Assembly: GCA_002269645.1 (NCBI GenBank)
Contig: NIVC01002494.1
Span: 62,001-126,000, forward strand
Direction of reading: 5' to 3'
Origin: Macrostomum lignano
Lineage: Eukaryota
Length of the DNA: 64,000 bases
Shown here: positions 335 to 45,756 of the stretch, piece by piece
Numbering within the stretch: position 1 is the first letter of the stretch
Layout of the letters: every line of letters begins with the position of its first letter
Notes under the pieces: model-generated
What the model was told of the DNA's origin: nothing
What the model saw: only the letters and a program-made list of their open reading frames with translations
Database searches by the model: none
Position numbers and translations under genes: made by a program

Positions 335-2347
335 TCAGCAGGTCTCCAGCAGCTGCCGTCTCTTAGCGGGCCTCATCGGGCTCCCAGCCGGGCAGCGGAA
401 CGCCCGGCCGAACTCCACGGAGTCCTTCAGCATGCCGTTCACCCGCCGGCGCGCGGTCGGGTGCTCAGCGTCGGCTTTAAACACGGCGCCCTCCGCGGCG
501 TCGGAGCCCCAGGCGCAGAAGTCCTGGGCCGCACGAACAAAAAACAGGCGCTCGGCTGCGTTGCTTGAACCGGCGCCACCGGCTGTCATGACAGCGGGCA
601 CGGCGTCCTTAGTAACGAGTGTCCGCATCCGGTAGGCCCGGTGCGCGGCCCTCAGGCCCAGCCAGTCGGCCAGGCGCTCCCATCGGGTTGCGCCGCCGTT
701 TCGACATTCGCCATTTCGTCGCTCCAGCTTGGCGTAGTTGGCCAGGGAGTGCCCGAGCTCGTGCCCCAGCTGGAGACCCAGGCCACCGTAGATGGAGAAG
801 GCCGGATAGTCGGGTCGATAGGCGGGAGACTGCAGCAAAGACAGGGGCAGCAAGATGACGCTGAACCGCTCCTGGCTTGCAGTGCTCAGAGTGTACGCAT
901 TGGCGATGAACGGGTCCATGCGCTCGATCGGGTCCTCCGCTCCCCTGCTGCAGCTCAGCAGCGAGTCCAGCCTCTGTCTAGCGCGGGATTCTAGCGCCAG
1001 GCCCAGCGCCGCGGCCTCCAGGGCGCCATTGCGGGATCGGATGACCTCCCGTGCCGACCGATCGGACAGGCCCCAGCTCTGGCGGCCGTAGCCCAGATAC
1101 ACGGGGGTTGAGTGCAGCTTCTCAGCCACGCGAGCTCGCTCCGCCGCAGAGCCGAGCGCCGGGGATTCCAGCGCGAGTTCGGCCATAGACGAGCGAATGT
1201 TGTCGGCAACGTTGGCCGCGGTGGGCAGAGCGGCCGAGGTCAGGTAGCGCTGGTGATAGAAATGCGCCACGGCGGGTCCGAGCAGCTGCGTCACCAGGTG
1301 CAGGCACTGCCGCCTGATGTACAACTGCTGGCTGTTAGAGCTGGACATGGAGCTGGGGCTGGGGCTGTCGTCAGTGTGCTGGTGCTGGTGTAGGTTGAGC
1401 AGGCTGCCCTGCAGTTCCACTACGGCATCCAGGGTGAGGAAGGCTTGCACCTGGGCGATTGGCAGTTTGCCGAGATGCTTCAGCAGAGCTTCGAGTCCCT
1501 TTAGTCGGTGATGCATCAGCTCGAACGATTCCGGAAGCTGGAGCTTCATCGTCTTGAACAGGTGACGCACGTACATCGTCCAGTTGAAGGCGGAGGCCGT
1601 GTCCAGCTCAGCCAGGGTGCTGCTTGACATCTCGCCGTCGTTTTTTGTCGGTGCCTTGGGCTCGACAGTGTCGATTAATTCGGCGACATCGACAGCCACA
1701 GCGCTGGCGACGATGGCGCTGCGCGCAGGAAAGCCGGCGCCGCGGAGCAGGCGCAGGGCGCGCCGGAGTTCAGCCGAGTTGCCGGCGTAGCCGAAGCGTC
1801 TCTGGCGGATGAAGCCGGCTCCAGAATCTCCAGTCTCCAGGCGGAACGGGCCGGTGAAGCCTGACCTGGCGTGAGCGGCCAGCAGCTGCTCGAGGCTGCC
1901 CGACTCGCGCCGGTTCCGGGCCAGCCGATGCAGCAGCGACCTCAGACTCTCGCGTTGCTTAGCAACCGAGCTCCGGTGCCAGGACCGGCAGCTGGCGAAG
2001 GTGGCGCCAACCAGCCTGGCAGCGGCCGGAGCCCCGGAATCGCCGCCGTCTGTCGCCAAGTCGGTGACCAGGCGGAACAGCCGGGCCTCAGTCTGGGCGC
2101 CCAGCTGCAGGCTGGTGTCGGTGTAGGCGGAGCCGGCCGAGCCCGGCCCGTCCAGGCCGGCGTAGTGGCCGGCCGCGCCCGCCGCCGAGCTGAAGCCGCC
2201 GCAGGCGTAGCTATAAAAATCGTAGCACGGGTCGGCGGAGCGGTTCATCTTCAGCAGCATGGCGGCGCCGTCCTCGGTGCAGGCGTCCGTGTCGCAGCAC
2301 CGGACGGCAGCGGCCGCTATGAGCAGCAACAGGGCTTGGCAGAGCAT
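335..2347 (-). CDS. Intronless M13-family zinc metallopeptidase (neprilysin/ECE-like), 670 aa, with N-terminal hydrophobic signal
   Basis: MLCQALLLLIAAAAV leader; ADPCYDFYSYACGG (M13 N-terminal motif); NAY substrate motif; HELGH zinc motif; ERLAD (ExxxD third ligand); FFVRAAQDFC; HPTARRRVNG; FRCPAGSPMRP C-terminus. Confidence 0.9.
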   Translation of the reverse strand: MLCQALLLLIAAAAVRCCDTDACTEDGAAMLLKMNRSADPCYDFYSYACGGFSSAAGAAGHYAGLDGPGSAGSAYTDTSLQLGAQTEARLFRLVTDLATDGGDSGAPAAARLVGATFASCRSWHRSSVAKQRESLRSLLHRLARNRRESGSLEQLLAAHARSGFTGPFRLETGDSGAGFIRQRRFGYAGNSAELRRALRLLRGAGFPARSAIVASAVAVDVAELIDTVEPKAPTKNDGEMSSSTLAELDTASAFNWTMYVRHLFKTMKLQLPESFELMHHRLKGLEALLKHLGKLPIAQVQAFLTLDAVVELQGSLLNLHQHQHTDDSPSPSSMSSSNSQQLYIRRQCLHLVTQLLGPAVAHFYHQRYLTSAALPTAANVADNIRSSMAELALESPALGSAAERARVAEKLHSTPVYLGYGRQSWGLSDRSAREVIRSRNGALEAAALGLALESRARQRLDSLLSCSRGAEDPIERMDPFIANAYTLSTASQERFSVILLPLSLLQSPAYRPDYPAFSIYGGLGLQLGHELGHSLANYAKLERRNGECRNGGATRWERLADWLGLRAAHRAYRMRTLVTKDAVPAVMTAGGAGSSNAAERLFFVRAAQDFCAWGSDAAEGAVFKADAEHPTARRRVNGMLKDSVEFGRAFRCPAGSPMRPAKRRQLLETC

Positions 2348-4159: not shown

Positions 4160-7130
4160 GCGGCAAGACCAAGAGAGGGCAGCGAAGCGAGCGCCGGTGA
4201 GTTGAACGTCGGCGTAAGCGAAACCGGCGAGGTCGGCAACGTGGTTCCGCCCGTCGAGCTGCTGCCTTACTTAACCAATCGGATCTTCCGGGTGGCGCCG
4301 GGGACCGTGAGGCTCACTGTCATCGAGCCCGCACAAGGCACGCTTCGGGTCGGGACGCTGAACTGCCGCACTCTCAAGGCCGCCTGGTGGAGAGGGCTGC
4401 TGCCGCAGCTAGCGCTCGACCTCAGATGCGATGTCATCTCGCTGCAAGAGGTGTCCATCAGGGCCGACCCGGGAATTCACTGTGTGGACCTAGGCGCCGG
4501 CTGGACCCTCTAGTACACGTCGGCGGACCAACGAGGCCGTGGAGGAGTTGGAGCGCTGATCGGACCGAGGCTGCAGCAGAGCTGTCGCTGCTTCGGGTCG
4601 ACGCCCGGCTTCGCGGCCGGAACGCTCGCCTGTTCTGCGCGTATGCGCCTCCTGCCACCCGACCTGACGAGGCTCAAGTCTTCTTCGAGCAGCTCTCGGC
4701 CCAGGTGGAGGAGACGGCGCAGTGTGACACAGTGGTCGTCCTCGGAGACCTGAACGCGATTTTGCGTAGGTCCGAGCGGTCGCTGTTTGTGACACCGCGC
4801 GAGAACGGAAACACCGGAGCGCTAGAAGACTTCCTGGAGAGGCAGGACATGGTGTCGGCCAACACCCGGTTCCGCAAGCCACCCGGCAGGCTCGCGACCT
4901 TCGTGGGCTGCAAGCTCGCGGAGGCAGGCACAGCTCGACCTTGTGCTTGTGCGTCTTCGTGAGCACCGCCGCGCCGTCAACTGCCGCATCATCACGCCGC
5001 TGGCTCTGCGGTCCGACCACCGGCTCCTCGTCTGCGACCTGCGTGCACGCGATCCGCTTTACGTCCGCCGAAGCGGCCACTGCGGCGCTACTACCGTGCG
5101 CTCAAGGACAGCCAGACGCGTCGCAATTTTGCTAGTGCCTTCGTCAGCGCGCTTGGCGACAGGTGCGGGTGCGCCGAGTACACGGAGGTAAGTGCCGCGC
5201 TTAGAGCCGCGGCGGAGCAAGCAGTCCCACTGATGCAACCGGCCCAACATGGACAGCCGGTCTGGCAGGACGACCCTGCGATCCGGCAAGCGAGGGCAGA
5301 GCTGGAGAGGCTCCGTCTGAGCAGGCGGCCAACTCGCGAGGCGGAGGAGGCTCTGGCGGCTGTCTACCTGCAGCGGCAACAGGGCGCTGTGGATGACGCC
5401 ATCCAGGCTGTCACCTCCGCTGGACCCGACGCTAAAGGGCGCGTGGCCTAGTCCGCCATCAATGCTCTGACCGGGCGGAAGCTGCGCATCCCGCTCAACC
5501 TTGCCGGCGACACTCCGGATGAGCGCAAAAATGAGCTGCGCAAGTTCTTCGCCGCCATCGTCAGCGCGCCGTCGCCCCCGCTGCCAAACGATCTGAGGCT
5601 GCCACCGGAGACGCCGTTGCCGGCAGAGGAGAGTTTTAATGTAGCGCCAGTCAGCACAGCCGACGTTGTGAGGCCCGCCCAACAGTCACCGAGCGGGAAA
5701 GCGCTGGGTCCGGACGAGGTGCCCATCGATGCGCTGCGACTCCACTGTGTGGCCAGCGAGGTCGCCAGTGTGATGAACCGCGTGCTTTTCGTTGAGGCGG
5801 CACCCAATGAATGGACCACGGCGCACATCGTCGCTATTCCGAAGAAACCGTGCACCACACGGCTTGAGGAGCACCGAGGTATCTGCTTTCAGTCCTGCGC
5901 TGCGAAGCTGTTCAACCGGATGCTGTTATCGCGGTTGCAGCCCGTGCTGGACCCGTACCTGCGTCCTGAACAGAACGGCTTCCGGCCCCACCGCGGCACA
6001 GTGGCGCAGATCCTGGCTCTTCGCCGAGTCATCGAGGAAGCGCGGACCCGCCAGTCGAGCTGCTCTCTTTATTGACTTCAGGAAGGCTTTCGACTCAGTC
6101 GTGAGGGCCGTGCTCCAATGGTGCTTCGTGCGTACAACGTGCCAGAGCAACTGATTTCCGCCGTCATGGCGCTGTATCACGGCACGAACGCTGCTGTGCT
6201 GACACCGGACGGCCTGTCGGATTTCTTTGAGACATCCTCTGGGGTGCTTCAGGGAGATACGCTTGCGCCGTTCCTGTTTGTCCTGGTGTTTGACTGGGTG
6301 CTGCGCGGACTGCTCTCCCTTCTAACGACGACGGCTTCCTGCTGCAGCGACGCGTGGGTCGACGCCAACCGGAAAGGCGGCTTTGCGTTTTGGGCTAGGC
6401 CGATAATCTCGCTTTGCTGTCCTCAACCGTCGAAGGCGCCCAACGCCAGCTGGACCGGCTGTTGAGCGTTGCGGCGAGTGTCAGCCTGGTGGTCAACACG
6501 CAGAAGACCGTCGTGCTCTGCGTGCCGGACGACATAGTGGCTGCTATTTTCTGCCGAGGCGCCGACTGTCAGGCGACGAAGCTTCCGTGCTGTCAGCAGT
6601 TCGTCTACTTCGGCGGTCTGGTGCCTGACGTTCGCGAGGACCTGCGACTTGCCTGGGCTGTCTTTCGTTCCGTGAGGGCTGTCCTGCAGTCCGAGGCCCT
6701 GCCCGACCGCCAGAGGACGGCGTTGTTCCAGGCGGTGATCGAGACCGTCCTGTTGTACAACGCCGAGACCTGGACACTGACGGATTCGCTCGAACAGCTG
6801 GTCGATGCGGCGCACGCTGGCCTGCTGCGCGCCGCCTTCAAGATCGGCTACGAGCGAGTCACCAATGAGGCACTCTATCGCCGAACCGGCCTGTCCCGTC
6901 CCAGCGAACTGTTGCGCCGTCGGTGACTCCAGCTGGCATGCCACATCATCTGCGCCGAGTCGTACTGCCCACAGCCGGTGCAGGAGGTGCTGCTGCTGAC
7001 GCTACAGGCACCGGGCAGGCGTGTACTCGGCGTTTCGTCGACTGCCTTTGCTGGCTGATGCCGGCGCCCCGGACACTGCCGGCGGCGCGGCCTACGTTCG
7101 CGCCCAGGCCTTGAAACGCGCCTTGTGACG
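4160..7130 (+). mobile_element. Decayed non-LTR retrotransposon (APE endonuclease + RT, RTE-like); stops and frameshifts
   Basis: Endonuclease motifs VGTLNCRTL, DVISLQE, VLGDLNA, SDHRLL; RT motifs GKALGPDEVP, WTTAHIVAIPKK, EQNGFRPHRG, FIDFRKAFDSV, GVLQGDTLAPFLF; RTE-type LLYNAETWTLT. In-frame TAG at 4511 and 5449, several frameshifts, YADD box degraded. Element ends approximate. Confidence 0.85.
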
Positions 7131-14955: not shown

Positions 14956-16079
14956 TTGACCAGTATAGAAAAAAACCTGCGATCTTACTCAACATTGGCA
15001 AATAATTGTACAAGTGCATGTTTTTAAAATAATCTTACATCTCTGCGAAGGTAATTGCTATCTTAATTCCGAACTATTAATTTAATTGGTAGCTACGAGT
15101 ACACAGCTCGCATCCACAAGCTGGCTTTACATAATAGACTGATATTTAACGTCTCCACCATCTTGACTAACAAAAAACAAGCCCTAGGTCGAGCAAAAAG
15201 AAAGAAAGATTCAAGTTTTCATTTAAATGACATCGATAATCAGGCCAAGATTCTATATGCATAAAGGCCGCAGATGAATCGTCGCACACAGACGCACAGG
15301 AAAGTCCTGTGATCAACAGCTGGCTTCCTGAGCGCAAGGCGATAGGGGGGGGGGGGGGGAAGGAGGAAGAGGCGGTAGGGGAAGAGAATAAACTCGCATT
15401 GGAACAGGAAAAAAGGCCGTCTCAAATGTCAAGCAAGAAAAAGAGCCTGGCTGGCAGTCAGTCTGGGCCCCCCTCCATCGGCTCTCTCTCTCTCTCTTTT
15501 CTCTTTTAGTTCCAATCCGCTGGAAACTTGAGAATCCGAGATTCTCGTGTCTCTCTCTCGCTGTCTCGGCCAGTGTATTATGTCAGGCTGGGATATTAGC
15601 TAGCCGGCCGCATTACATGGAATCGAATACCAGCACGTGGAATAGGAGATGATGGCGGGCGTGAGCGCCAGAGATGCGCCTGCTTCAACGGGAAGCTTTC
15701 AATGCGTACATATTTATTTACACGCATGCACTGTGAAGACAACTGTTGCAAAATAATTTACTCCTTGCCAAATTAATGTACATTCATTGCAAGCTGCGTG
15801 TGTAATTAAGCTTGTACAAATTTACATCGATGTAGTTCTCTATAATTTTAGTCAATATTGCAGTTTGCCACAAATCTTGTAAAATTCAAGTCAATTTTGT
15901 CATCCCGGAATGTATATTGATTTACAAAACGCATTGAACTGAAGGGTCGTCAAAACGAGCACTAATCTTATATTGTACAATGGCAAAATGGCATCGTGTA
16001 CACAAGAAATTTCTCTTGTACAATAGCATAATCAAATCCTGTACACAAGGAGTCAATCTTGTACGACTGCATGATCGCA

Positions 16080-16920
16080 TCTTGTACACAAGGAATCCAT
16101 CTTGCACACAAGGAATCCATCTTGTACACAAGGAATCCATCTTGTACACAAGGAATCCATCTTGCACACAAGGAATCCATCTTGTACACAAGGAACCCAT
16201 CTTGCACACAAGGAATCCATCTTGTACACAAGGAACCCATCTTGCACACAAGGAATCCATCTTGTACACAAGGAATCCATCTTGTACACAAGGAACCCAT
16301 CTTGTACACAAGGAACCCATCTTGTACACAAGGAATCCATCTTGCACACAAGGAATCCATCTTGCACACAAGGAATCCATCTTGCACACAAGGAACCCTA
16401 CAAGGAATCCATCTTGTACACAAGGAACCCATCTTGTACACAAGGAATCCATCTTGTACACAAGGAACCCATCTTGTACACAAGGAACCCATCTTGTACA
16501 CAAGGAACCCATCTTGTACACAAGGAACCCATCTTGTACACAAGGAACCCATCTTGCACACAAGGAATCCATCTTGTACACAAGGAATCCATCTTGTACA
16601 CAAGGAACCCATCTTGTACACAAGGAACCCATCTTGCACACAAGGAATCCATCTTGTACACAAGGAATCCATCTTGTACACAAGGAACCCATCTTGTACA
16701 CAAGGAACCCATCTTGCACACAAGGAATCCATCTTGTACACAAGGAATCCATCTTGTACACAAGGAACCCATCTTGTACACAAGGAACCCATCTTGTACA
16801 CAAGGAACCCATCTTGCACACAAGGAACCCATCTTGCACACAAGGAACCCATCTTGCACACAAGGAACCCATCTTGTACACAAGGAACCCATCTTGTACA
16901 CAAGGAACCCATCTTGTACA
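16080..16920. repeat. 20-bp minisatellite CTTG(T/C)ACACAAGGAA(T/C)CCAT, about 42 copies, starting about 90 bp past the OXSM stop
   Basis: Direct reading. Confidence 0.96.
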
Positions 16921-17011
16921 GGAGCAATCAGATTAATACACATTATAAAACCGAGCCAAAAAGCAATGCAAATCAGCGAATGGAAATCCGGTTCAATTGT
17001 CAAATGCACAA

Positions 17012-18775
17012 TCAGGGCAGGTAGCTGGCAATACACAGCGAAGCGTTCACGCCACCGAACCCGAAGCTGTTGCTCAGAGCAACCCGCCGACCGTCCGCTG
17101 GATTAGTCGGCCAATCCGCCGGCGGACCGTCGGGCACCAGACGGAGCGACTCCGACGCTGTCGGCAGGTCGGGCCGCGCCAGATTAGCCGTGGGCGGCAC
17201 GCGGCCAGTCTGGCAGGACAGCGCAGTCAGCGCGGCCTCCACAGCGCCGGCAGCTCCGATCAGGTGGCCGAGGGCGCCTTTGCACGAAGCCACCAGGCAG
17301 CCTGGCTGGATGACGGAGGCGTCAGCGCCGCTCAGCAGCGACTCGATGGCCAGCCATTCGGCGGAGTCGCCAATCGGAGTCGAAGTGGCGTGCGCGTTCA
17401 CGTGGCCAACCTGGAGAGCGAGCGGCCGCTGCCAAGCTGCTGCAAAAAAAAGGTGGAAGCAGACAAGGTGGAAGCAGGATAAGATGGAAGCAGACAAGGT
17501 GGAAGCAGACAAGGTGGAAGCAGGATAAGGTGGAAGCAGACAAGGTGGAAGCAGACAAGGTGGAAGCAGACAAGGTGGAAGCAGACAAGGTGGAAACAGA
17601 CAAGGTGGAAGCAGACAAGGTGGAAGCAGACAAGGTGGAAGCAGACTAAATGGAAGCAGATCAGGTGGAAGCAGACTAAATGGAAGCAGATCAGGTGGAA
17701 ACAGACAAGGTGGAAGCAGACTAAATGGAAGCAGATCAGGTGGAAACAGACAAGGTGGAAGCAGACAAAACGGAAGCAGACTAAATGGAAGCAGATCAGG
17801 TGGAAACAGACAAAATGGAAGCAGACAAAACGGAAGCAGACAAGGTGGAAGCAGACAAAATGGAAGCAGACAAGGTGGAAGCAGACAAAATGGAAGCAGA
17901 CAAGGTGGAAGCAGACAAGGTGGAAGCAGACAAGGTGGAAGCAGACAAGGTGGAAGCAGACAAGGTGGAAGCAGACAAGATGGAAGCAGGATAAGATGGA
18001 AGCAGACAAGGTGGAAGCAGACAAGATGGAAGCAGGATAAGATGGAAGCAGACAAGGTGGAAGCAGACAAAATGGAAGCAGACAAGGTGCAAGCAGACAA
18101 AATGGAAGCAGACAAGGTGCAAGCAGACAAAATGGAAGCAGACAAGGTGGAAGCAGACAAAATGAAAGCAGACAAAATGGAAGCAGACAAGGTGCAAGCA
18201 GACAAAATGGAAGCAGACAAGGTGCAAGCAGACAAAATGGAAGCAGACAAGGTGGAAGCAGACAAAATGGGAGCAAACAAGGTGGAAGCAGATCAGGTGG
18301 AAGCAGATCAGGTGGAAGCAGATCAGGTGGAAGCAGATCAGGTGGAAGCAAGATGGAAGCAGACAAGGCACTAATAACTACCAGAGTGGTTGCCGGCTTC
18401 CCGAAGCGCGGCCAACATGCAGCGCCTGGCGCCGCTGTCGCCGCCCAGCTTCGGCGCCGTCAGATGATGCGCATCGCAGGCGGCGCCGTAGCCAAGGACT
18501 TCAGCGATTGGCGCCGGGGCGCCTCTGGCCAGCGCGGAGTCCAGGGCCTCCAGCACCAGCACGCCGGCGCCCTCCGACATGACGAATCCGCACCGGTCGG
18601 CATCGAAAGGCCGCGAAGCTGCCAGCGGATTGTCGTTGAAGCGAGTAGTCAGGGCGCGGACGCGACTGAAGGCCGCCACCTGAGGGGGATTTGGGTTTAA
18701 TTTAATCGGCTGGTGGGATGGGCAACGCACATAATGGATGCTGAGTTCTTGGCGAGCACGGACAGACAGACAGAC

Positions 18776-18854
<79 letters not shown>

Positions 18855-19514
18855 GGCAGACAGACAGACAGACGGACACAGACACGCACGCACCGCAAGC
18901 GGGCCAATGCAGGCCTCGGTGCCGCCGCACAGGGCCGCATCCACGATTCCGTCGCGCACCAGTCGAAACGCGGCGCCAATAGCGTCGGCGCCGCTGGCGC
19001 ACGCGGAATTCGGCGACAGACAGGGCCCAGTGGCGCCGAACTCGATGGCCACCCGGCCGGCCGGCATGTTGTTGAGCAGCTTGGTGAGGAAGTGCGGCCC
19101 GACCTCCGCGTAGCCGCGTCCGCTGCGCAGCCCGACGCCGGCGTCCACCGCCGTCTCCAGCCCGTCCATGCCGCAGCCGATGGCCACGCCGATCAGCGAG
19201 TCCGGCGAGCGCCGTCGCATCCCGGCCAAATCGGCGCCTTGGGCAGCCTCGCGCGCCGCTGCCAGCGCCAGAGCGGAGGCGCGGGACATCTCGGCACGGT
19301 TTCGCTTGTCAAACTGCCAGCTCGGCCAGCCAGACAGCTCGGCCTCGGGGATCAGGCCGGCCACTCGGCAGGGCAGTCCAGAGTAGCCGTCCGCCTCGGA
19401 CAGACGACCGAAATTTGGCCGGCCGGCAAGCACTTGCGCCCAGACTGTGCGCCAGCCGGCGCCGACTGGGGCGGCCAGCCCGAGGCCGGTGATCACAACT
19501 CGACGGCAGCCGCT
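17012..19514 (-). CDS. OXSM: 3-oxoacyl-ACP synthase, mitochondrial type (KAS II/FabF-like). Exons 19514-18894, 18679-18382, 17439-17012; no ATG at the 5' end
   Basis: RRVVITGLG N-terminus; catalytic Cys in SPNSACASG; His in DAHHLTAP; His in KGALGHLIGAAG; C-terminal SNSFGFGGVNASL. GT-AG introns 18893-18680 (phase 0) and 18381-17440 (phase 1) restore a continuous frame; TGA at 17014-17012. Confidence 0.9.
17448..18370. repeat. 15-bp minisatellite GTGGAAGCAGACAAG filling OXSM intron 2
   Basis: Occupies nearly all of the 942-bp intron. Confidence 0.95.
18768..18890. repeat. (CAGA)n microsatellite in OXSM intron 1
   Basis: Direct reading; starts a few bases inside the donor site. Confidence 0.95.
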
Positions 19515-19559
19515 CTGCAATCGTTTGGGAGCGGTTGGGATTTTGATAGTGGGGAAGAC

Positions 19560-20635
19560 GGGGAGATGGGAGGATGGGGAGAATGGGGAGGTGGGTGAAT
19601 GTGGAGAATGGGAGAATGGAGAGAATGGGGAGATGGGAGAATGCGGAGAATGGGGAGGTGGGTGAATGTGGAGAATGGGAGAATGGAGAGAATGTGGAGA
19701 ATGGGAGAATGGAGAGAATGGGGAGATGGGAGAATGGGGAGAATGGGAAGATGGGAGAATGGGGAGAATGGGAAGATGGGAGAATGGGGAGAATGGGAAG
19801 ATGGGAGAATGGGGAGAATGGGAAGATGGGAGAATGGGGAGAATGGGAAGATGGGAGAATGGGGAGAATGGGAAGATGGGAGAATGGGGAGAATGGGGAG
19901 AATAGAGAGAATGGGGAGAATGGGAAGATGGGAGAATGGGGAGAATGGGAGAATGGGGAGAATGGGAAGATGGGAGAATGGGGAGAATGGGAAGATGGGA
20001 GAATGGGGAGAATGGGAAGATGGGAGAATGGGGAGAATGGGAAGATGGGAGAATGGGGAGAATGGGAGAATAGTGAGAATGGGGAGAATGGGAGAATAGA
20101 GAGAATGGGGAGAATGGGAAGATGGGAGAATGGGGAGAATGGGAAGATGGGAGAATGGGGAGAATGGGAGAATAGTGAGAATGGGGAGAATGGGAGAATA
20201 GAGAGAATGGGGAGATGGGAGCATGGGGAGAATGGGGAGAACGTGGTGGGAGAATATGGAGATGGAAGAATGGGGAGAATGTGGAGGTGGGGAATGGGGA
20301 GAATGTGGAGGTGGGGAATGGGGAGAATGTGGAGGTGGGGAATGGGGAGAATGTGGAGCTGGGAGAATGGGGAGAATGTGGAGCTGGGAGAATGGGGAGA
20401 ATGTGGAGGTGGGGAATGGGGAGAATGTGGAGCTGGGAGAATGGGGAGAATGTGGAGCTGGGAGAATGGGGAGAATGTGGAGGTGGGGAATGGGGAGAAT
20501 GTGGAGCTGGGAGAATGGGGAGAATGTGGAGCTGGGAGAATGGGGAGAATGTGGAGCTGGGAGAATGGGGAGAATGTGGAGATGGGGAATGGGGAGAATG
20601 TGGAGCTGGGAGAATGGGGAGAGTAGGAGAAGAGC
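19560..20635. repeat. Purine-rich (GGAGAATG/GGGAAGAT) degenerate minisatellite immediately upstream of the first OXSM exon
   Basis: Direct reading; many G3/G4 tracts on the + strand. Confidence 0.93.
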
Positions 20636-21149
20636 TAGAATGAAGTTAGTGGTGGTAGCCAGGGAGCAAAACAGTGAGCAGAATATTCTTAGACTGAGCC
20701 AAATTGGCAACTGAAAATCGTGTCAAAAAATAAGTTAAAAGCAAGATTTGATTTGACTTTTTCGAATGCTCAAAAGCCCAGCAAAGAGGGGAAAAGCTTG
20801 AAAACTTTTGCACTTGCAGCTTTTTGCAAAAGTTGAGCAGATTTGACTTCCTTAGGAATTCTAAAAAATTGTTTTTCAGAAAAGGCAGAAAAGCAATAAA
20901 ACTTGTTGCAGAAACTCGCCCGGCAAGTTGGCAGTAACAACAACACCTGCTAATTGCTAAATTGCATTTGCTGAAGCAATTTGCCCACCTGTGTCGAGCA
21001 ATTAGAAGGAAAAAATAATCGGGGGAAATGCGAAAGCAGAAAATTAGCCAAATTATTCGCAGAAGACAAAGCAAAAAAAAAACTAATAATCGACAAGCTA
21101 AATCGACCGAGGAGAAACTCTAACTGACGCAGGGCTTGTTTGTTGGAGG

Positions 21150-22080
21150 GAGAGGCAGATTCTCAAGGACTGAGGGAGCGGAGATGCAGATTCTCAAGGA
21201 CTGATGGAGCGGAGAGGCAGATTCTCAAGCACTGATGAAGCGGAGAGGCAGATTCTCAAGGACTGATGGAGCGGAGAGGCAGATTCTCAAGGAATGATGG
21301 AGCGGAGAGGCAGATTCTCAAGCACTGATGGAGCGGAGAGGCAGATTCTCAAGCACTGATGGAGCGGAGAGGCAGATTCTCAAGGACTGATGGAGCGGGG
21401 AGGCAGATTCTCAAGGACTGATGGAGCGGAGAGGCAGATTCTCAAGCACTGATGGAGCGGAGAGGCAGATTCTCAAGAAATGATGGAGCGGAGAGGCAGA
21501 TTCTCAAGAAATGATGGAGCGGAGAGGCCGATTCTCAAGGACTGATGGAGCGGAGAGGCAGATTCTCAAGGACTGATGGAGCGGAGAGGCAGATTCTCAA
21601 GAAATGATGGAGCGGAGAGGCAGATTCTCAAGAAATGATGGAGCGGAGAGGCAGATTCTCAAGAAATGATGGAGCGGAGAGGCCGATTCTCAAGGACTGA
21701 TGGAGCGGAGAGGCAGATTTTCAAGGACTGATGGAGCGGAGAGGCAGATTCTCAAGGACTGATGGAGCGGAGAGGCAGATTCTCAAGAAATGATGGAGCG
21801 GAGAGGCAGATTCTCAAGAAATTATGGAGCGGAGAGGCAGATTCTCAAGAAATGATGGAGCGGAGAGGCAGATTCTCAAGAAATGATGGAGCGGAGAGGC
21901 AGATTCTCAAGAAATGATGGAGCGGAGAGGCAGATTCTCAAGAAATGATGGAGCGGAGAGGCAGATTCTCAAGAAATGATGGAGCGGAGAGGCAGATTCT
22001 CAAGGACTGATGGAGCGGAGAGGCAGATTTTCAAGGACTGATGGAGCGGAGGCAGATTCTCAGACACTGAGCGGAGACAC
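21150..22080. repeat. 31-bp minisatellite GCAGATTCTCAAG(GAC/CAC/AAA)TGATGGAGCGGAGAG, about 30 copies, abutting the RAD54B stop
   Basis: Direct reading; array edge about 10 bp from the stop codon at 22090. Confidence 0.95.
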
Positions 22081-22089
22081 TGTCCAGCT

Positions 22090-25000
22090 TCAGTCACTCG
22101 CAGCCTCCCAGCCGCCAACCTCGTGCCACATCACGAAGCTGACCGAGTCGCCAGCTGCCATCAAAGTCTGTTCGAAGCCGCCGAAACCTGCAAAGTCGCT
22201 GCCGGAAGCAGCAGCCGCCGCCGCAGACACGTGATGCCAGTCGGACAGCAGAGCCAGACCGCCGCTGCCGACAGGTCCGCCACCGCCGCCGCCGCGCTGT
22301 CGCCGATCAGTCGTTGATTCCAGAAGCGTCGACGCGGTTTCGCTGTCAGCAAAATTGTAGCCCAGCTGACATCGACGAACGACCGCTGCAGGCGGAGGCT
22401 GCTGCGGCGGAGCTACCGAATGTCCATCGTCGCCGCCGCCGCTGCCGCTGCCGAGGCAACGGCAGTTGAGGCAGTCGTGAGCGAGGCAGTCGGTGTCGCC
22501 GACAAAGGTGAACAACTCGGCCAGCTCTTGCCGAGTGAATCGGGGCGTCGACGACTTCTTGGAGCCGTTGGCTCCGCTAATCAAAGCGGACGCGGCGCCA
22601 GAGGCCGAGTCCAGGATGCTCCGGGATAGGCCGAGCTTCTTCACCTGGAGAATGGGTGTGTTTTTTTGCCATGGAGACCGGGTGGAAATAGACCGTTTTG
22701 TGACAGACTACCGACAAAGAGTGACAGACTACTGACAGTGTCAGAATACCTGACAGAGTGACAGACTACTGACAGTGTCAGAATACCCGACAGAGTGACA
22801 GACTACTGACAGTGTCAGGATACCCGACAGAGTGACAGACTACTGACAGTGTCAGGATACTTCTGACAGAAGAGTGACAGACTACTGAGTGTCAGAATAC
22901 CTGACAGAGTGACAGACTACTGACAGTGTCAGGATACCCGACAGAGTGACAGACTACTGACAGTGTCAGAATACCTGACAGAGTGACAGACTACTGTATG
23001 AAAAACTGAGATCAGTGAAGCAGAAAACCAGCCAAAGCAGCGCCTGAGAACCTGTCTGAGAAAGATTCGCTCCTCAATGCTGCCCGCGGTCAGCAGCCTG
23101 TAGACGCTGCACGGCCTCCGCTGCCCCTCCCGCCAGATCCTGGCCGTAGCCTGGGCATCGTTGGCCGGATTCCAGTCGATATCGAATAGAATCAAGTCGC
23201 TGGCACCCGTCAGGTTCAGGCCGACTCCGCCGGCTTTGGTGCTGAGCAGGAGGACCCGGCCGCCGCCGACGCCGATGCAGCGGGTGTCGTTGAACTGATC
23301 GACAAGCCGCTGTCGAGTCGCCGTCGGCGTAGCACCGTCCAGGCGCAGGCTGGCCAAGCCGAGGGCGGCGCACAGGCGGCCCAGCAGGTCCAGCGTCTTC
23401 GTGGAATTCGACGCCAGGACGCAGTTGCGGCCGCGGCCGCGGCAGATGCGCTGCAGCAGCTGGGACGTCACCGACAGCTTGCCGGACGAGGAAGTGGCTA
23501 CGAGATTGTCATCGATCAATTCGTTCAAGCCGCCGTCGGCGTCGAAGTCTAGCGGAAACTCCGACATCAGCTGGCGGGACAAGTCGTCGTAGTTTTCGCT
23601 GTTGCCGCCCCTCCCGCCAGCGGCTTGCTGCTTCTGGCCGATCGTGGGGAATAGCGGGAAAATTATGGATGATTAACAGAACTTGTACAGGTGTTTCTTT
23701 CTAAATTAGTGCCAGATATTGATGGGATGGTTGGGGTGGGGATGGGATCTCTCGAGATGCGGATGGGATCTCTGGGGATGCGGATGGGATCTCTCGGGAT
23801 GCGAATGGGATTTCTCGGGATGAGGATGGGATCTCCTAGGTAAGAATGGGATCTCCTAAGTGAGGATGTGATCTCCTAGGTGAGAATGGGATATTCTAGG
23901 TGACGATGGGATCTTCTAGGTGGGAATGGGATCTTCTAGGTGGGAATGGGATCTTCTAGGTAAGAATGGGATCTCCTAGGTGAGAATGGGATCTCCTAGG
24001 TAAGAATGGGATCTCCTAGGTGAGGATGTGATCTCCTAGGTGAGGATGTGATCTCCTAGGTGAGAATGGGATATTCTAGGTGACGATGGGATCTTCTAGG
24101 TGGGAATGGGATCTTCTAGGTGGGAATGGGATCTTCTAGGTGAGAATGGGATCTCCTAGGTGAGAATGGGATCTCCTAGGTGAGGATGGGATCTACGGGG
24201 GAAGATGGGATCTCTTCATAGTGCCACTGGAACCATCAGTAAAAGCCGGGGAAAAATAGAAAACCTTGACACCAAGCAAAGCGTGCGAAGCCTACTACTT
24301 ACAGCGACCAGATGCGCATGCAGCAAAGCGGGGTCGCTGGCCACCTTGCGCAGCAGCCCGATGAGGCGCAGGTGCTCACCGTCAGCTAGGCGGGCCGTGT
24401 GGCCCAGCTTGTCCGACAGCACCTCGACGGCGGCGGCGCAGCCGCACACGACGTCGAATAGGCGGCGTTGAAGGTCGGACGGCCGGCAGAAGATTACCAG
24501 TTCGCGCTTCGGCGGCAGGCTGCCGGCAGAGTCGATGTCCTCGTGGCATCGGCGCAGCACCATTGGGGCGATGAGGCGGCTCAGTCTGGTGTGGGGTGGT
24601 GTTTGTGGGGCCTGCTGGTGCCTCCATGTCCGAGATTTAAGGGGTCTTAGAATGGGGTTGAGGATGGGGTTGGGGATGGGGTTGAGGATGGGGTTGGGGA
24701 TGCAATGCGTAGGGATAGTTCGGGGACAGGGTTTCTAGAAACTTCCACCGCGGACTTGTTTACGCATAGTTCCAGAAGTTTCCTCTCCCGGTCTTTCTAG
24801 AACTTTCCTTCCCCGCGTGCATAAATATACGAGCCGCCCTCCTATTGGCCAAGCCCTCTTTTGGTGCCACTGAGCGCCCGGATAATTATCTATCTTGTTT
24901 CTGCGTTCGTTAATTCAACAACAGAAGAATGGGGTTGAGGATGGGGCTGACGGGGGTTGAGGATGGGGCTGAGAATGGGGTTGAGGATGGGGTTGAGGAT

Positions 25001-42161: not shown

Positions 42162-45100
42162 ATGAGTTTTGGAAGGCGCAACAACTTCATGGATCCAAAC
42201 TTCGATGGTCGTCGAGGTCGTCAGATGACTTCGCCAAAAGCGTCAGCTCTGCCTGGCGGCCCAGCGGGCCCTGCCGAAGGATTCAACGATAATGTGCCGA
42301 ACGGATTGTTGAAGACAGCTAAGCAGACTGGAGTGCTGAATCTTTCTAATAAAGATTTGTCTCATGTGCCCGATAAAGTGTGGCAGGTGAGTTGCTGGTC
42401 TTTTGGCCTCTAGCTGGCTAGTTTCTTGCCAAGAGGGGGAGATTCTCCCCAAGTCCGCCACTATAGCAATGAGATTCTCCCCAAGTCTACCACTATAGCA
42501 ATGAGATTCTCCCCAAATCCACCACTATAGCAATGAGATTCTCCCCAAGTCCACCACTATAGCAATGAGATTCTCCCCAAGTCCGCCACTAAAGCAATGA
42601 GATTCTCCCCAAGTCCATCACTATAGCAATGAGATTCTCCCAAGTCCACCACTATAGCAATGAGATTCTCCCCAAGTCCACCACTATAGCAATGAGATTC
42701 TCCCCAAGTCCACCACTATAGCAATGAGATTCTCCCCAAGTCCGCCACTAAAGCAATGAGATTCTCCCCAAGTCCGCCACTAAAGCAATGAGATTCTCCC
42801 CAAGTCCGCCACTAAAGCAATGAGATTCTCCCCAAGTCCGCCACTAAAGCAATGAGATTCTCCCCAAGTCCATCACTATAGCAATGAGATTCTCCCCAAG
42901 TCCACCACTATAGCAATGAGATTCTCCCCAAACCCGCCACTAAAGCAATGAGATTCTCCCCAAGTCCGCCACTAAAGCAATGAGATTCTCCCCAAGTCCA
43001 CCACTATATCAATGAGATTCTCCCCAAGTCCGCCACTAAAGCAATGAGATTCTCCCCAAACCCGCCACTAAAGCAATGAGACTCTCCCCAAGTCCGCCAC
43101 TAAAGCAATGAGATTCTCCCCAAGTCCGCCACTAAAGCAATGAGATTCTCCCCATATCCATCACTGTAGCAATGAGATTCTCCCCAAATCCATCACTATA
43201 GCAATGAGATTCTCCCTAAGTCCGCCACTAAAGCAATGAGATTCTCCCCGATCCGCCTCTACATTGGTTGAACTTCAAGTCACAGCGCAGTCCCAGAAGC
43301 CCCACCTGCAACCCACTTGGCAGCTGGCCAACAGCGCGGACGCCTCCCCAGCCGACATCGCACTGGACAGATCCGGGGACAACGGGCCGCGCTGGTGGGA
43401 GGTCGCAGAGCTGACGAAGCTCTACCTGTCAGCCAACAGGCTGGAGTCTCTGTCCGAGTCCATCGTCAAGTTTCCCCATCTGGCAGTTGTCGATGTCCGG
43501 GACAACCGGCTGATCCGCCTGCCTGACGCCGTCGGGCAGCTCGCCGAGCTGCGCAGCCTCAACGCCTCGAAGAATCGGCTGATCGAGTTGCCGCCCAGCC
43601 TGGCCGCCAGCGGCTCCCTTGTCCAACTGAGCGTCTCGGCCAACTGCCTGTCTGAATTGCCGCCGGACATTGGCCGGCTGGACAGTCTGTCCGAGTTGGA
43701 CATTGCGGACAATCAGCTGACCGGCCTGCCGGACAGTATCGCCATGCTGCGCTGCCTCCGCTGTCTGGAGGCCGGCGGCAACCGGATTGACAGCCTGCCA
43801 GCTGGGGTGGCCTATCTGCCGGCCTTGAGTCGCCTTGGCCTGGCCGGCAACCGGCTCGAGCACCTGCCAGGCGGCCTCTATCCGGCTCTGGAGGTGCTGG
43901 ACCTGTCCGACAATCAGCTGACCGACCTGCCGCCAATTGGAGCCGATCCAGATTCGCCAGCCAAGCTCAAGGAGTTGCACCTGGTTAATAACAGGATTAG
44001 CCGGCTGTTGCCAGACAGGCTCCGTCCGCTGGGCGTCAGCCTTCGCCATCTGGATCTGAAGCGCAACTGCCTGTCTGAACTGCCCGTCGAGTTGGCTGGG
44101 TTGCTGCCTCTGCTTGAGCGATTGGACCTCACTAATAACGATTTGAGCAGCCTGCCAAACGAGCTCGGCCTGCTCACTGGGCTGAAGTGCATCCTGCTGG
44201 ACGGCAATCCGCTTCGAGCCCTGCGTCGCGAAGTTGTTGCCAGGGGCACTGAGGCCATCAAAAAGCATCTGGCTTCGCGCATCGCCCAGCCCGCGGCTGC
44301 CGAGGCCGCCGTTGACGCCGCAGCCGCCGTTGCCGCCGCCGCCGCTGCCGCCGTCGCTTCTGGCGGCTCCGCTACGGAAGTCGCCGCAGCTGCGTCCGCC
44401 TGTAGTAAAAAAATCAGCAAAAAGGACCCGGCCCCCAAAACTGCTCTGCAGGTGAGGTGAACTGAAGCAAATCCTCATTGGGAGTCAGTCTGTCTCAGAA
44501 ACCCCCATTGAGAGTCAGTCTGTCTCAGAAACCCCCATTGAGAGTCAGTCTGTCTCAGAAATCCCCATTGAGAGTCAGTCTGTCTCAGAAATTCCCATTG
44601 AGAGTCAGTCTGTCTCAGAAACCCCCATTGAGAGTCAGTATGTCTCAGAAATCCCCATTGAGAGTCAGTCTGTCTCAGAAACCCCCATTGAGAGTCAGTA
44701 TGTCTCAGAAATCCCCATTGAGAGTCAGTCTGTCTCAGAAATCCCCATTGAGAGTCAGTCTGTCTCAGAAATCCCCATTGAGAGTCAGTCTGTCTCAGAA
44801 ATCCCCATTGAGAGTCAGTCTGTCTCAGAAATCCCATTGAGAGTCAGTCTGTCTCAGAAATCCCCATTGAGAGTCAGTCTGTCTCAGAAATCCCCATGAA
44901 GAATCGAACCCGTCCCGAACCCGCAGGCCCTGCAACAGCAGTTCGGCCTGGATCTGGGCGAGCTGCGCGTCACCGGCAGTTTAAAATATGCCGACAAGCG
45001 AGTAGCGGAAGTGCCGGAACCGCTGCTCGAACTGTTGGCCAACAACTCGGAGACTGGCGTCAGCGTGACCCGGATTGACCTCTCCGGCAACGAGTTGGCT

Positions 45101-45277
45101 GGACTGCCCGAGCGGCTGGCGAAGCCGCCGTTCGCCGACAGCCTCCTGGAGGTGTCGCTTCGCAAGAATTGCCTGGTTGGTCAGCTGGACGCCGGAGTGG
45201 CTCAACTGGCTTCACTGACGGTGAGTCTGGGCGTTGGGCTGGTGGGGGCCTGTCTACTACTACTACTACTACTACTG

Positions 45278-45325
<48 letters not shown>

Positions 45326-45756
45326 ATACTAATACTAATACTACTACTACTACTACTACTGCTCATTTGCAGGTATTAGATCTGTCAGTCAACCAGCTCA
45401 CCAGCCTACCCATGGAGGTGTCCCAGCTCAAGCAGCTACAGAATCTCGTGCTGTCCTACAATCGCATAGCAGAATTTCCCGAGCCGCTGTACAGTCTGCC
45501 CCGCCTGGAAACCGTCCTATTGGCTAATAACTGCATCGCGACTTTGCAGCCGGACAGACTGCGCGGCATGAGCAGGTTGGCCACGCTGGATCTGACCAAT
45601 AACAGCTTGGCTACGGTGCCTCCCCAGCTGGGCCTGTGCACCAACCTGCGCAATCTGCACCTGGAGGGAAACCGGTTTCGGGTGCCGCGGCCCGATCAGC
45701 TGGCCAAGGGCACCGCTTTTGTGCTAGAATACCTGCGCAATAGGATTGCCGGTTAG
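42162..45756 (+). CDS. LRRC40: Leucine-rich repeat-containing protein 40, 4 exons: 42162-42386, 43324-44451, 44927-45220, 45373-45756
   Basis: VPNGLLKTAKQTGVLNLSNKDLSHVPDKVWQ and RWWEVAELTKL match the LRRC40 N-terminus; two LRR blocks; C-terminal FRVPRPDQLAKGTAFVLEYLRNRI; three phase-0 GT-AG introns. Confidence 0.88.
42440..43250. repeat. 32-bp minisatellite GAGATTCTCCCCAAGTCC(G/A)CCACTA(T/A)AGCAAT, about 25 copies, LRRC40 intron 1
   Basis: Direct reading. Confidence 0.95.
44475..44897. repeat. 30-bp minisatellite GAGAGTCAGTCTGTCTCAGAAATCCCCATT, about 14 copies, LRRC40 intron 2
   Basis: Direct reading. Confidence 0.95.
45255..45360. repeat. (CTA)n microsatellite, LRRC40 intron 3
   Basis: Direct reading. 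Confidence 0.95.

What the first reader, a model, noticed from the sequence alone, without database searches (positions are those of the whole stretch)
19495..19560. OXSM has no genomic start codon: candidate initiation from a spliced-leader AUG
The conserved frame begins at 19514 (AGC GGC TGC CGT CGA GTT GTG = SGCRRVVITG) straight after a TTGCAG acceptor, in phase 0. Between there and the RAD54B stop I found only two minus-strand ATGs (about 20225 inside the array, out of frame; about 20967, stopping after 5 codons with no donor). Flatworm spliced leaders end in AUG, which can act as initiator (established). Adding it gives MSGCRRVVITGLG, the same length as the presequence-less N-terminus I recall for yeast Cem1 (MSRRVVITGLG). 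The gene would then depend on trans-splicing for translation.
Basis: partly seen in the sequence, partly recalled or inferred. Interest (0 to 1): 0.75.

Follow-up and report, generated by a model that had tools for sequence, protein, structure and literature searches.

The report
OXSM start codon supplied by spliced leader
In this Macrostomum lignano (flatworm) window the mitochondrial fatty-acid enzyme gene OXSM has no usable ATG of its own and very probably takes its start codon from the AUG at the end of the trans-spliced leader, a known flatworm mechanism that was not confirmed here with transcripts.

Summary
On the minus strand, a TTGCAG acceptor (19520-19515) is followed in phase 0 by AGC GGC TGC CGT CGA GTT GTG. 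The ketoacyl-synthase homology starts at codon 4. The first in-frame genomic ATG is codon 76. Only two sense ATGs lie in the 2,575 nt back to the upstream Rad54-family stop codon, and neither can be joined in frame.

The window is Macrostomum lignano: UniProt A0A1I8IIW1 is 99% identical and itself starts at "SGCRR" without a Met. The published M. lignano spliced leader is 35 nt, ends in ATG, and has the trans-acceptor motif [T/C]TNCAG, which this site matches. Joining the two gives MSGCRRVVITGLG. This aligns column for column with the presequence-less N-termini of copepod, rotifer and Pichia orthologues.

Use of the spliced-leader AUG as initiator is established for flatworms (Cheng et al. 2006), so this is a new member of a known kind. 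I could not reach any transcript data, so the trans-splice itself is inferred (confidence about 0.75). Rivals are non-AUG initiation, a missing or misassembled exon, and a dead gene copy. Interest is modest. The main value is for annotation, plus a possible Rad54-OXSM operon.

The parts
19515..19520 (-). TTGCAG 3' splice acceptor, the proposed spliced-leader trans-splice site; AG at 19516-19515.
   Evidence: Read directly. Matches the M. lignano trans-acceptor motif [T/C]TNCAG (PMC8629364). It is one of only three such motifs in the spacer and the only one giving a meaningful ORF.
18894..19514 (-). OXSM exon 1: 207 codons, phase 0, begins SGCRRVVITGLG and contains the active-site Cys (ACASG). 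The first in-frame ATG is codon 76, at 19289.
   Evidence: GC 72% and GC3 83%, against a G-poor array upstream. Donor is GCG|GTGCGT.
18382..18679 (-). OXSM exon 2: end of the KS N-terminal domain and start of the C-terminal domain.
   Evidence: Acceptor cccctcag|GTG and donor TCTG|GTAGTT. PF00109 tail. Aligned to human OXSM.
17012..17439 (-). OXSM exon 3 with both catalytic His residues (NAHATST, GALGHL) and the stop codon at 17014-17012. The acceptor is a CAGCAG (NAGNAG), so the start could also be 17436.
19521..19559 (-). Unique pyrimidine-rich tract between the array and the acceptor. Together with the array it forms an AG-free stretch from 20358 to 19517.
   Evidence: The 60 nt before the AG are 70% pyrimidine. 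No AG between 20358 and the acceptor.
19560..20622 (-). CT-rich minisatellite (9/25/50-bp periods, 1% G on the sense strand). It is the candidate outron or intercistronic filler. It holds the out-of-frame ATG at 20224.
   Evidence: TRF. Composition. ATG and GT positions.
20623..21143 (-). Unique spacer segment. It contains the 5-codon ATG at 20967, two other acceptor-like motifs (first exon bases 20970 and 20710) and the only donor-like site (ACACAG|GTGGGC, 20988). It could hold a promoter, a non-coding exon, or the Rad54 3' UTR end.
21144..22062 (-). 31-bp x 29.7 tandem array directly after the upstream gene's stop. It has no sense-strand ATG.
   Evidence: TRF. Sequence.
22090..22644 (-). Stop codon TGA at 22092-22090.
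   Evidence: Neighbouring exons hit PF00271 and PF00176, and zebrafish Rad54 1z3i is the best solved structure. RAD54B versus RAD54L was not resolved here.

Best explanation
The OXSM pre-mRNA of Macrostomum lignano is trans-spliced at the TTGCAG acceptor (AG at 19516-19515). It is made either from its own promoter or as the downstream part of a Rad54-OXSM polycistron.

The 35-nt spliced leader (SL) ends in AUG. Joined to exon 1 in phase 0, it gives ...UUAUUGCAUG|AGC GGC UGC CGU CGA. The mature mRNA therefore has a 32-nt leader followed by an ORF that starts MSGCRRVVITGLG. The initiator methionine is not encoded at the locus, and the upstream 'outron', mostly a CT-rich minisatellite, is discarded.

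The product is a full-length mitochondrial-type ketoacyl-ACP synthase with no cleavable presequence. Its first 40 residues carry five Arg and no acidic residue.

Shown: the sequence anatomy, the organism, the SL sequence and acceptor motif (from the literature), and the lack of any other in-frame ATG.

Inferred: that trans-splicing happens at this site, that ribosomes start at the SL AUG, and that the protein reaches mitochondria.
For: 1. Anatomy: a phase-0 acceptor directly before codon 1. KS-domain homology starts at codon 4.

2. No alternative ATG. Only two sense ATGs lie in the 2,575-nt spacer and neither is usable. The in-frame upstream stretch of 378 codons has no ATG, CTG, GTG or ACG. 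The only donor-like site (20988) lies upstream of ATG 20967, whose ORF stops before any GT. The first genomic in-frame ATG is codon 76, which would delete strand beta-1 and 75 residues of the fold.

3. The gene looks functional. It has three clean GT..AG exons and the Cys/His/His triad. The best solved-structure matches are human mitochondrial OXSM at E ~2e-89, ahead of bacterial FabF.

4. The organism is M. lignano. Its SL ends in ATG, 30-39% of its genes are trans-spliced with enrichment among conserved genes, and the trans-acceptor motif is [T/C]TNCAG. The Macrostomum community treats the terminal ATG as a start codon. Cheng et al. 2006 showed that more than 40 S. mansoni cDNAs need it (cited).

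5. UniProt A0A1I8IIW1, from a second copy or assembly, starts at exactly the same Ser with no Met.

6. The predicted N-terminus aligns column for column with Tigriopus MPMGRRVV, Pichia MSQSRRVV and Brachionus MNRHRVV, and with bacterial KAS II, where RRVV begins at residues 2-4.

7. About 840 nt upstream of the acceptor (20358-19517) are free of AG, and about 1.15 kb upstream (to 20672) hold only two GT, neither donor-like. This is the condition for trans- rather than cis-splicing (Conrad et al. 1993 as cited).
Against: - There is no direct transcript evidence. M. lignano proteins and contigs could not be reached, and OXSM is not in the held supplements.
- The Met-less UniProt model also skips the His303 region. 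It may therefore be an ab initio partial model whose start at an acceptor only reflects a contig edge.
- Being in phase has a one-in-three chance expectation. In S. mansoni only 28% of SL AUGs are in frame.
- Most animal OXSM orthologues carry 33-46-aa presequences, so an undetected upstream exon is conceivable.
- The context of the SL AUG (U at -3, A at +4) is not Kozak-optimal.
Confidence: 0.75

Rival explanations
1. Non-AUG initiation on a transcript that is not trans-spliced. The mRNA would retain sequence upstream of 19514, and translation would start at the in-frame UUG (19520-19518) or at a weaker near-cognate codon (AUC at about 19541 or 19535). This would give MQSGCRR... or a slightly longer N-terminus.
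For: The frame is open upstream, and TTG 19520 is the only strong in-frame near-cognate codon. Non-AUG starts, UUG included, are documented by ribosome profiling in other trans-splicing animals.
Against: The UUG lies inside the acceptor consensus and is removed by any splicing at this site. Its context is poor (C at -3, C at +4). An unspliced leader would run through a 1-kb array. An organism whose SL carries a ready AUG has no need of it.
Confidence: 0.07
2. A real ATG-bearing first exon exists but is not visible here. It could be lost in a collapsed or misassembled array, or lie within or beyond the Rad54 gene. It would be cis-spliced to the 19515 acceptor and would probably encode a mitochondrial presequence.
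For: Mosquito, starfish and lamprey orthologues have 33-46-residue presequences. The region upstream looks like the gene's other introns, which are also filled with minisatellites. M. lignano assemblies are repeat-rich and hard to assemble. Flatworm acceptors are often shared between cis- and trans-splicing.
Against: No ATG plus donor combination exists anywhere in the 2,575-nt spacer. An independent public model from another copy or assembly also lacks any upstream Met. Presequence-less orthologues exist in three other eukaryotic lineages. An exon inside the neighbouring gene would be unusual.
Confidence: 0.1
3. This copy is not translated into full-length enzyme. It would be a decaying duplicate in a hidden polyploid, or yield only a truncated product from Met76, while another paralogue does the work.
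For: M. lignano carries large duplications. A near-identical second sequence exists.
Against: All three exons are open, with intact splice sites and catalytic residues, and GC3 is 83%. The second copy is 99% identical at protein level and starts at the same residue. A Met76 product would lack the core beta-1 strand.
Confidence: 0.06

Closest known systems
Flatworm mRNAs that use the spliced leader's 3'-terminal AUG as initiator methionine (Cheng, Cohen, Ndegwa & Davis, J Biol Chem 2006; Schistosoma mansoni)
   Same: The SL ends in AUG. The acceptor is in phase with the conserved ORF. No genomic AUG is available, so the protein needs trans-splicing for its start codon.
   Different: This is a different species (the free-living macrostomorph M. 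lignano) and a different gene (OXSM). Here the trans-splice is inferred from DNA and the literature rather than shown by cDNA or translation assays. No systematic list of SL-AUG-dependent genes for Macrostomum turned up in the papers I read.
[quoted passage not shown] 2017; Ustyantsev & Berezikov 2021)
   Same: The acceptor motif [T/C]TNCAG is present. OXSM is a conserved gene. The upstream neighbour is on the same strand. The spacer is dominated by simple repeats, and the repeat-adjusted distance is about 593 nt, under the paper's 1-kb operon threshold.
   Different: The raw spacer of 2.6 kb is long for an operon.
Presequence-less mitochondrial-type KAS: fungal CEM1-like (Pichia membranifaciens XP_019020229), copepod Tigriopus japonicus AUZ82873, rotifer Brachionus koreanus ATI22187
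   Same: The N-terminus is Met plus 2-3 residues, then RRVV(I/V)TG(L/I)G. The first 40 residues are basic and, in Pichia, acid-free like M. lignano.
   Different: Those proteins are annotated with their own start codons. I did not check whether the copepod and rotifer sequences, both from trans-splicing lineages, owe theirs to an SL.
Human OXSM (PDB 2iwy, 2c9h, 9n50)
   Same: It is the best solved-structure match, E ~2e-89 over residues 4-445, with a conserved Cys-His-His triad.
   Different: The human protein has an N-terminal mitochondrial presequence encoded in the gene. The M. lignano gene encodes none, and not even the Met.

Membership tests
SL-AUG-initiated flatworm mRNA (Cheng et al. 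2006 class) | The organism's spliced leader ends in AUG. | tested here: met
   The window is assigned to M. lignano by 99% identity to UniProt A0A1I8IIW1. The published SL is CGGTCTCTTACTGCGAAGACTCAATTTATTGCATG. The terminal ATG is noted as a start codon. No SL RNA gene lies in the window itself.
SL-AUG-initiated flatworm mRNA (Cheng et al. 2006 class) | The SL AUG falls in frame with the conserved ORF, with no intervening stop. | tested here: met
   SL plus exon 1 translates to MSGCRRVVITGLGLAA. Exon 1 is exactly 207 codons, starting at the first base after the AG.
SL-AUG-initiated flatworm mRNA (Cheng et al. 2006 class) | No genomic AUG can start the full-length protein. | tested here: met
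   two unusable ATGs in 2,575 nt, and the first in-frame ATG is codon 76.
SL-AUG-initiated flatworm mRNA (Cheng et al. 2006 class) | The mRNA is actually trans-spliced at this acceptor. | not testable with these tools
   No M. lignano transcripts or reads were reachable. Indirect support only: the acceptor motif, the donor-free and AG-free upstream stretch, and the Met-less public model.
SL-AUG-initiated flatworm mRNA (Cheng et al. 2006 class) | Translation initiates at the SL AUG. | not testable with these tools
   This needs ribosome profiling, N-terminal proteomics or reporter assays.
OXSM / mitochondrial beta-ketoacyl-ACP synthase (KAS II type) | Ketoacyl-synt N- and C-terminal domains with the Cys-His-His triad. 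| tested here: met
   PF00109 and PF02801. ACASG, NAHATST and GALGHL align to human OXSM.
OXSM / mitochondrial beta-ketoacyl-ACP synthase (KAS II type) | Closer to mitochondrial OXSM than to bacterial or plastid KAS. | tested here: met
   The top three solved structures are human OXSM (303 bits), against 268 bits or less for bacterial FabF. The nearest named relatives are animal 'synthase, mitochondrial' entries. No phylogeny was built.
OXSM / mitochondrial beta-ketoacyl-ACP synthase (KAS II type) | Mitochondrial targeting signal. | tested here: inconclusive
   There is no presequence. The first 40 residues have 5 Arg and 0 Asp/Glu, like Pichia. No targeting predictor was available.
M. lignano operon (criteria of Ustyantsev & Berezikov 2021) | Adjacent genes on the same strand with a repeat-adjusted intergenic distance under 1 kb. 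| tested here: met
   The spacer is 2,575 nt. Subtracting the TRF arrays (919 + 1,063 nt) leaves 593 nt, measured from the stop codon rather than from the poly(A) site.
M. lignano operon (criteria of Ustyantsev & Berezikov 2021) | The downstream gene is SL trans-spliced, and the genes share a primary transcript. | not testable with these tools
   No RNA data. The absence of A[AT]TAAA in the spacer is uninformative, because the hexamer is also sparse after other genes in the window.

The most novel reading that the evidence does not exclude
OXSM is the downstream cistron of a Rad54-OXSM operon whose 2.6-kb intercistronic region is almost entirely minisatellite. The enzyme depends obligately on SL trans-splicing both for release from the polycistron and for its initiator Met. 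It enters mitochondria through a non-cleaved, acid-free basic N-terminus instead of a presequence. Mitochondrial fatty-acid and lipoate synthesis would then be gated by trans-splicing in this animal.
Probability: 0.2. Interest if true: 0.45.

Novelty: new member of a known kind. Interest (0 to 1): 0.3.

Why it matters
The main consequence is practical. Genes of this kind are truncated or left 'fragment, no Met' by annotation pipelines that trim the spliced leader together with its ATG. The public UniProt entry for this very gene, A0A1I8IIW1, is such a Met-less fragment. The authors of the M. cliftonense/M. hystrix assemblies mention the same problem (PMC10468722).

The case also gives a clean, essential-pathway example for testing SL-AUG initiation in M. 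lignano, which can be made transgenic. It adds an animal OXSM that lacks a presequence. It does not change what is known about flatworm trans-splicing.

Tried and rejected
- **Transcript or second-locus evidence.** The search for homologous proteins with exon 1 returned only hits of 40% identity or less. A query beginning with the SL-encoded peptide VSYCEDSIYCM fused to the N-terminus returned nothing, with only 8 candidates. M. lignano therefore appears not to be indexed there. The look-up of encoding contigs failed for the M13 peptidase ORF, P0121, and the TTG- and ATG-started read-through ORFs. Exact look-up of four spliced variants, with and without Met, found nothing.
- **Paper supplements.** OXSM and RAD54B are absent from the held supplements of PMC5816591, PMC5173321 and PMC5730564, and none are held for PMC8629364. 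Wasik et al. 2015 is not held.
- **SL RNA gene in the window.** No Rfam hit and no SL match.
- **Cis exon from ATG 20224.** The only donor GT is at 19559, which is out of phase.
- **Cis exon from ATG 20967.** There is a stop before any GT.
- **SL-AUG at the upstream acceptor 20710 spliced at GT 20242.** This is in phase, but the donor GTTCTC is very poor and the exon would be 156 codons of array. Rejected (my own reading).
- **LRRC40-like gene at 43264 as a second ATG-less case.** Rejected, because an upstream exon with a GTGAGT donor lies at about 42300-42388.
- **Missing poly(A) hexamer as operon evidence.** Rejected as uninformative.
- **P0122, the nearest non-self homologue (48% identity).** It is a Logan contig of unknown organism with its own ATGs and no SL, so it does not help.

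Full report
**What is there.** The gene is on the minus strand. The sequence reads ...ccgctcccaaacgaTTGCAG|AGC GGC TGC CGT CGA GTT GTG ATC ACC GGC CTC GGG, with the first exon base at 19514. The frame gives SGCRRVVITGLGLAAPVG.... Exon 1 runs to 18894, with donor GCG|GTGCGT, and is exactly 207 codons, so the acceptor is in phase 0. Two further exons, 18679-18382 and 17439-17012, complete a 448-residue ORF.

Pfam places the ketoacyl-synthase N-terminal domain from profile position 2 at residue 4 (E 4.9e-33), and the C-terminal domain in exon 3. The spliced protein matches human mitochondrial OXSM best among solved structures: 9n50, 2iwy and 2c9h at E ~2e-89 and 303 bits. Bacterial FabF scores 268 bits or less. 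The Cys (ACASG) and both His residues (NAHATST, GALGHL) are conserved. The gene is therefore an intact OXSM-type KAS.

**The missing start codon.** The upstream neighbour on the same strand is a Rad54-family SNF2 ATPase: PF00176 and PF00271 in its exons, with zebrafish Rad54 1z3i as the best structure. Its last exon ends with TGA at 22092-22090. In the 2,575 nt between that stop and the acceptor there are exactly two sense ATGs.
- 20224 lies inside an array in frame 2. The only GT after it, at 19559, is out of phase.
- 20967 is followed by five codons and a TAG, with no GT before the stop.

The OXSM frame is open for 378 codons upstream, to a TAA at 20648. It contains no ATG, CTG, GTG or ACG, and its only TTG is the one inside the acceptor. 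The only donor-like site in the spacer (ACACAG|GTGGGC, 20988) lies upstream of ATG 20967 and would make a non-coding exon. The first genomic in-frame ATG is codon 76, at 19289. Starting there would delete the beta-1 strand RRVVITGLG and 75 residues of the fold.

**How much of this is chance.** About 77% of the spacer is two tandem arrays: a 31-bp x 29.7 array at 22062-21144, and a 9/25/50-bp CT-rich array at 20622-19560. The proximal array is 1% G, so the lack of ATG in the arrays is a composition effect. In the 521-nt unique part there is 1 ATG against 4.8 +/- 1.9 in dinucleotide shuffles, and 2.7% of shuffles had as few. That is only a mild depletion. The informative fact is the conjunction: a phase-0 acceptor three codons before the start of homology, and no usable ATG anywhere.

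**Which organism.** An exhaustive HMMER search returned one near-identical protein, P0121, at 99% over residues 1-207. It is UniProt A0A1I8IIW1 from Macrostomum lignano. That entry itself starts 'SGCRRVVITG...' with no Met, at exactly the base after the acceptor. This agrees with a transcript alignment that begins where the spliced leader stops matching the genome. However, the model also skips from APAPIAE to SLLSG and so loses His303. It may therefore be an ab initio partial model, and I treat it as supporting evidence rather than proof.

**What the literature says.** The M. lignano spliced leader (SL) is CGGTCTCTTACTGCGAAGACTCAATTTATTGCATG. Between 30% and 39% of genes are trans-spliced, with strong enrichment among conserved genes. 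The trans-acceptor motif is [T/C]TNCAG. Operons are defined by a repeat-adjusted spacing under 1 kb (PMC8629364; PMC5730564).

[quoted passage not shown] All flatworm SLs end in AUG. Cheng et al. 2006 showed that this AUG is used as initiator and that more than 40 S. mansoni cDNAs need it (cited in PMC9851317, and PMC12582326).

**Fit of the site.** TTGCAG matches the motif. Only three such motifs occur in the spacer. The other two would give a 7-codon ORF (20970) or a 406-codon out-of-frame array ORF (20710). There is no AG between 20358 and the acceptor (about 840 nt), and only two non-donor-like GTs lie between 20672 and the acceptor (about 1.15 kb). The 60 nt before the AG are 70% pyrimidine. 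This is the 'acceptor without an upstream donor' condition for trans-splicing. SL plus exon 1 translates to MSGCRRVVITGLGLAA.

**Is an OXSM without a presequence plausible?** Yes. Orthologues from the copepod Tigriopus japonicus (MPMGRRVV), the rotifer Brachionus koreanus (MNRHRVV) and the yeast Pichia membranifaciens (MSQSRRVV) begin at the same alignment column. Mosquito, starfish and lamprey proteins have 33-46 extra residues. In bacterial KAS II chains, RRVV starts at residues 2-4. The first 40 residues of the M. lignano protein have five Arg and no acidic residue, the same as Pichia. The equivalent human segment has four acidic residues. That hints at an internal, non-cleaved targeting signal, but this is inference only.

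**Operon question.** The spacer minus the two arrays is 593 nt, under the published 1-kb threshold. If OXSM is trans-spliced, the pair would be classed as an operon by those criteria. There is no A[AT]TAAA in the spacer, but the hexamer is equally sparse after other genes in the window, so this says nothing.

**What could not be done.** Every route to M. lignano transcripts or a second genomic copy failed. The gene is not in the held supplements. Trans-splicing at 19514 and initiation at the SL AUG are therefore inferred.

| Explanation | Confidence |
|---|---|
| SL-AUG initiation | about 0.75 |
| Hidden or misassembled upstream exon | about 0.10 |
| Non-AUG initiation | about 0.07 |
| Non-functional copy | about 0.06 |

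The mechanism has been known in flatworms for twenty years, so this is a new member of a known kind. Its value is modest and mainly concerns annotation.

Noticed in passing
window 15922-16942, 17450-18368, 18761-18878, 19560-20622, 21144-22062, 22713-22996: Every intron and flank of OXSM, and the last Rad54 intron, is filled with a different minisatellite: 20-bp, 15-bp x 61, (GACA)30, 9/25/50-bp, 31-bp x 30 and 37-bp units. The arrays are strongly strand-biased; the 19560-20622 array is 1% G on the gene's sense strand.
   Followed up: partly
UniProt A0A1I8IIW1 (P0121) versus window 18382-18480 and 17340-17439: The public M. lignano protein model is a fragment with no Met. It also jumps from APAPIAE to SLLSG, deleting about 72 residues including the catalytic His of NAHATST. 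This is probably an annotation artefact across the repeat-filled intron 2.
   Followed up: partly
window 17431-17445 (minus strand): The exon 3 acceptor is a tandem CAGCAG (NAGNAG). Both choices stay in frame and differ by one Ala. This segment (REAGNHSAAWQRPLALQVGH) is about 8 residues longer than in human OXSM.
   Followed up: no
window 20711-20716 (minus strand): There is a strong TTTCAG acceptor in the unique spacer. An SL AUG joined there would open a 406-codon ORF running through the array, out of frame with OXSM.
   Followed up: partly
window 54844-56402 and 56696-58254: A tandem duplication of a roughly 1.85-kb unit carries identical ORFs of 151 aa (minus strand) and 203 and 133 aa (plus strand). 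None has a Pfam hit. It is probably a repeated mobile or satellite-like element.
   Followed up: partly
window 4387-6944 and 53310-53744: Fragments of retroelements: reverse transcriptase PF00078 (E 1e-14 at 53310-53744; weaker at 5617-6075) and a faint endonuclease/exonuclease/phosphatase match at 4387-4962.
   Followed up: partly
window 335-2347 (minus strand): A single-exon 670-aa M13 (neprilysin/ECE-like) peptidase ORF with its own ATG and a signal-peptide-like N-terminus. By contrast the LRRC40-like LRR gene (about 42300-45756, plus strand) is multi-exon, with a 37-bp-type array in its intron.
   Followed up: partly
L001 (Logan SRR21676473 contig, 3752 nt), gene 271-1605: This is the nearest non-Macrostomum OXSM homologue (48% identity), from an unidentified organism. 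It has two in-frame ATGs close to RRVVVTG (MAMTKSGGG...AAMNRRVV) and a short extension that does not look like a presequence.
   Followed up: no
window 20623-21143 (minus strand): Sense-strand ATG is mildly depleted in the unique part of the spacer: 1 observed against 4.8 +/- 1.9 in dinucleotide shuffles. Three CAT occur on the same strand.
   Followed up: yes
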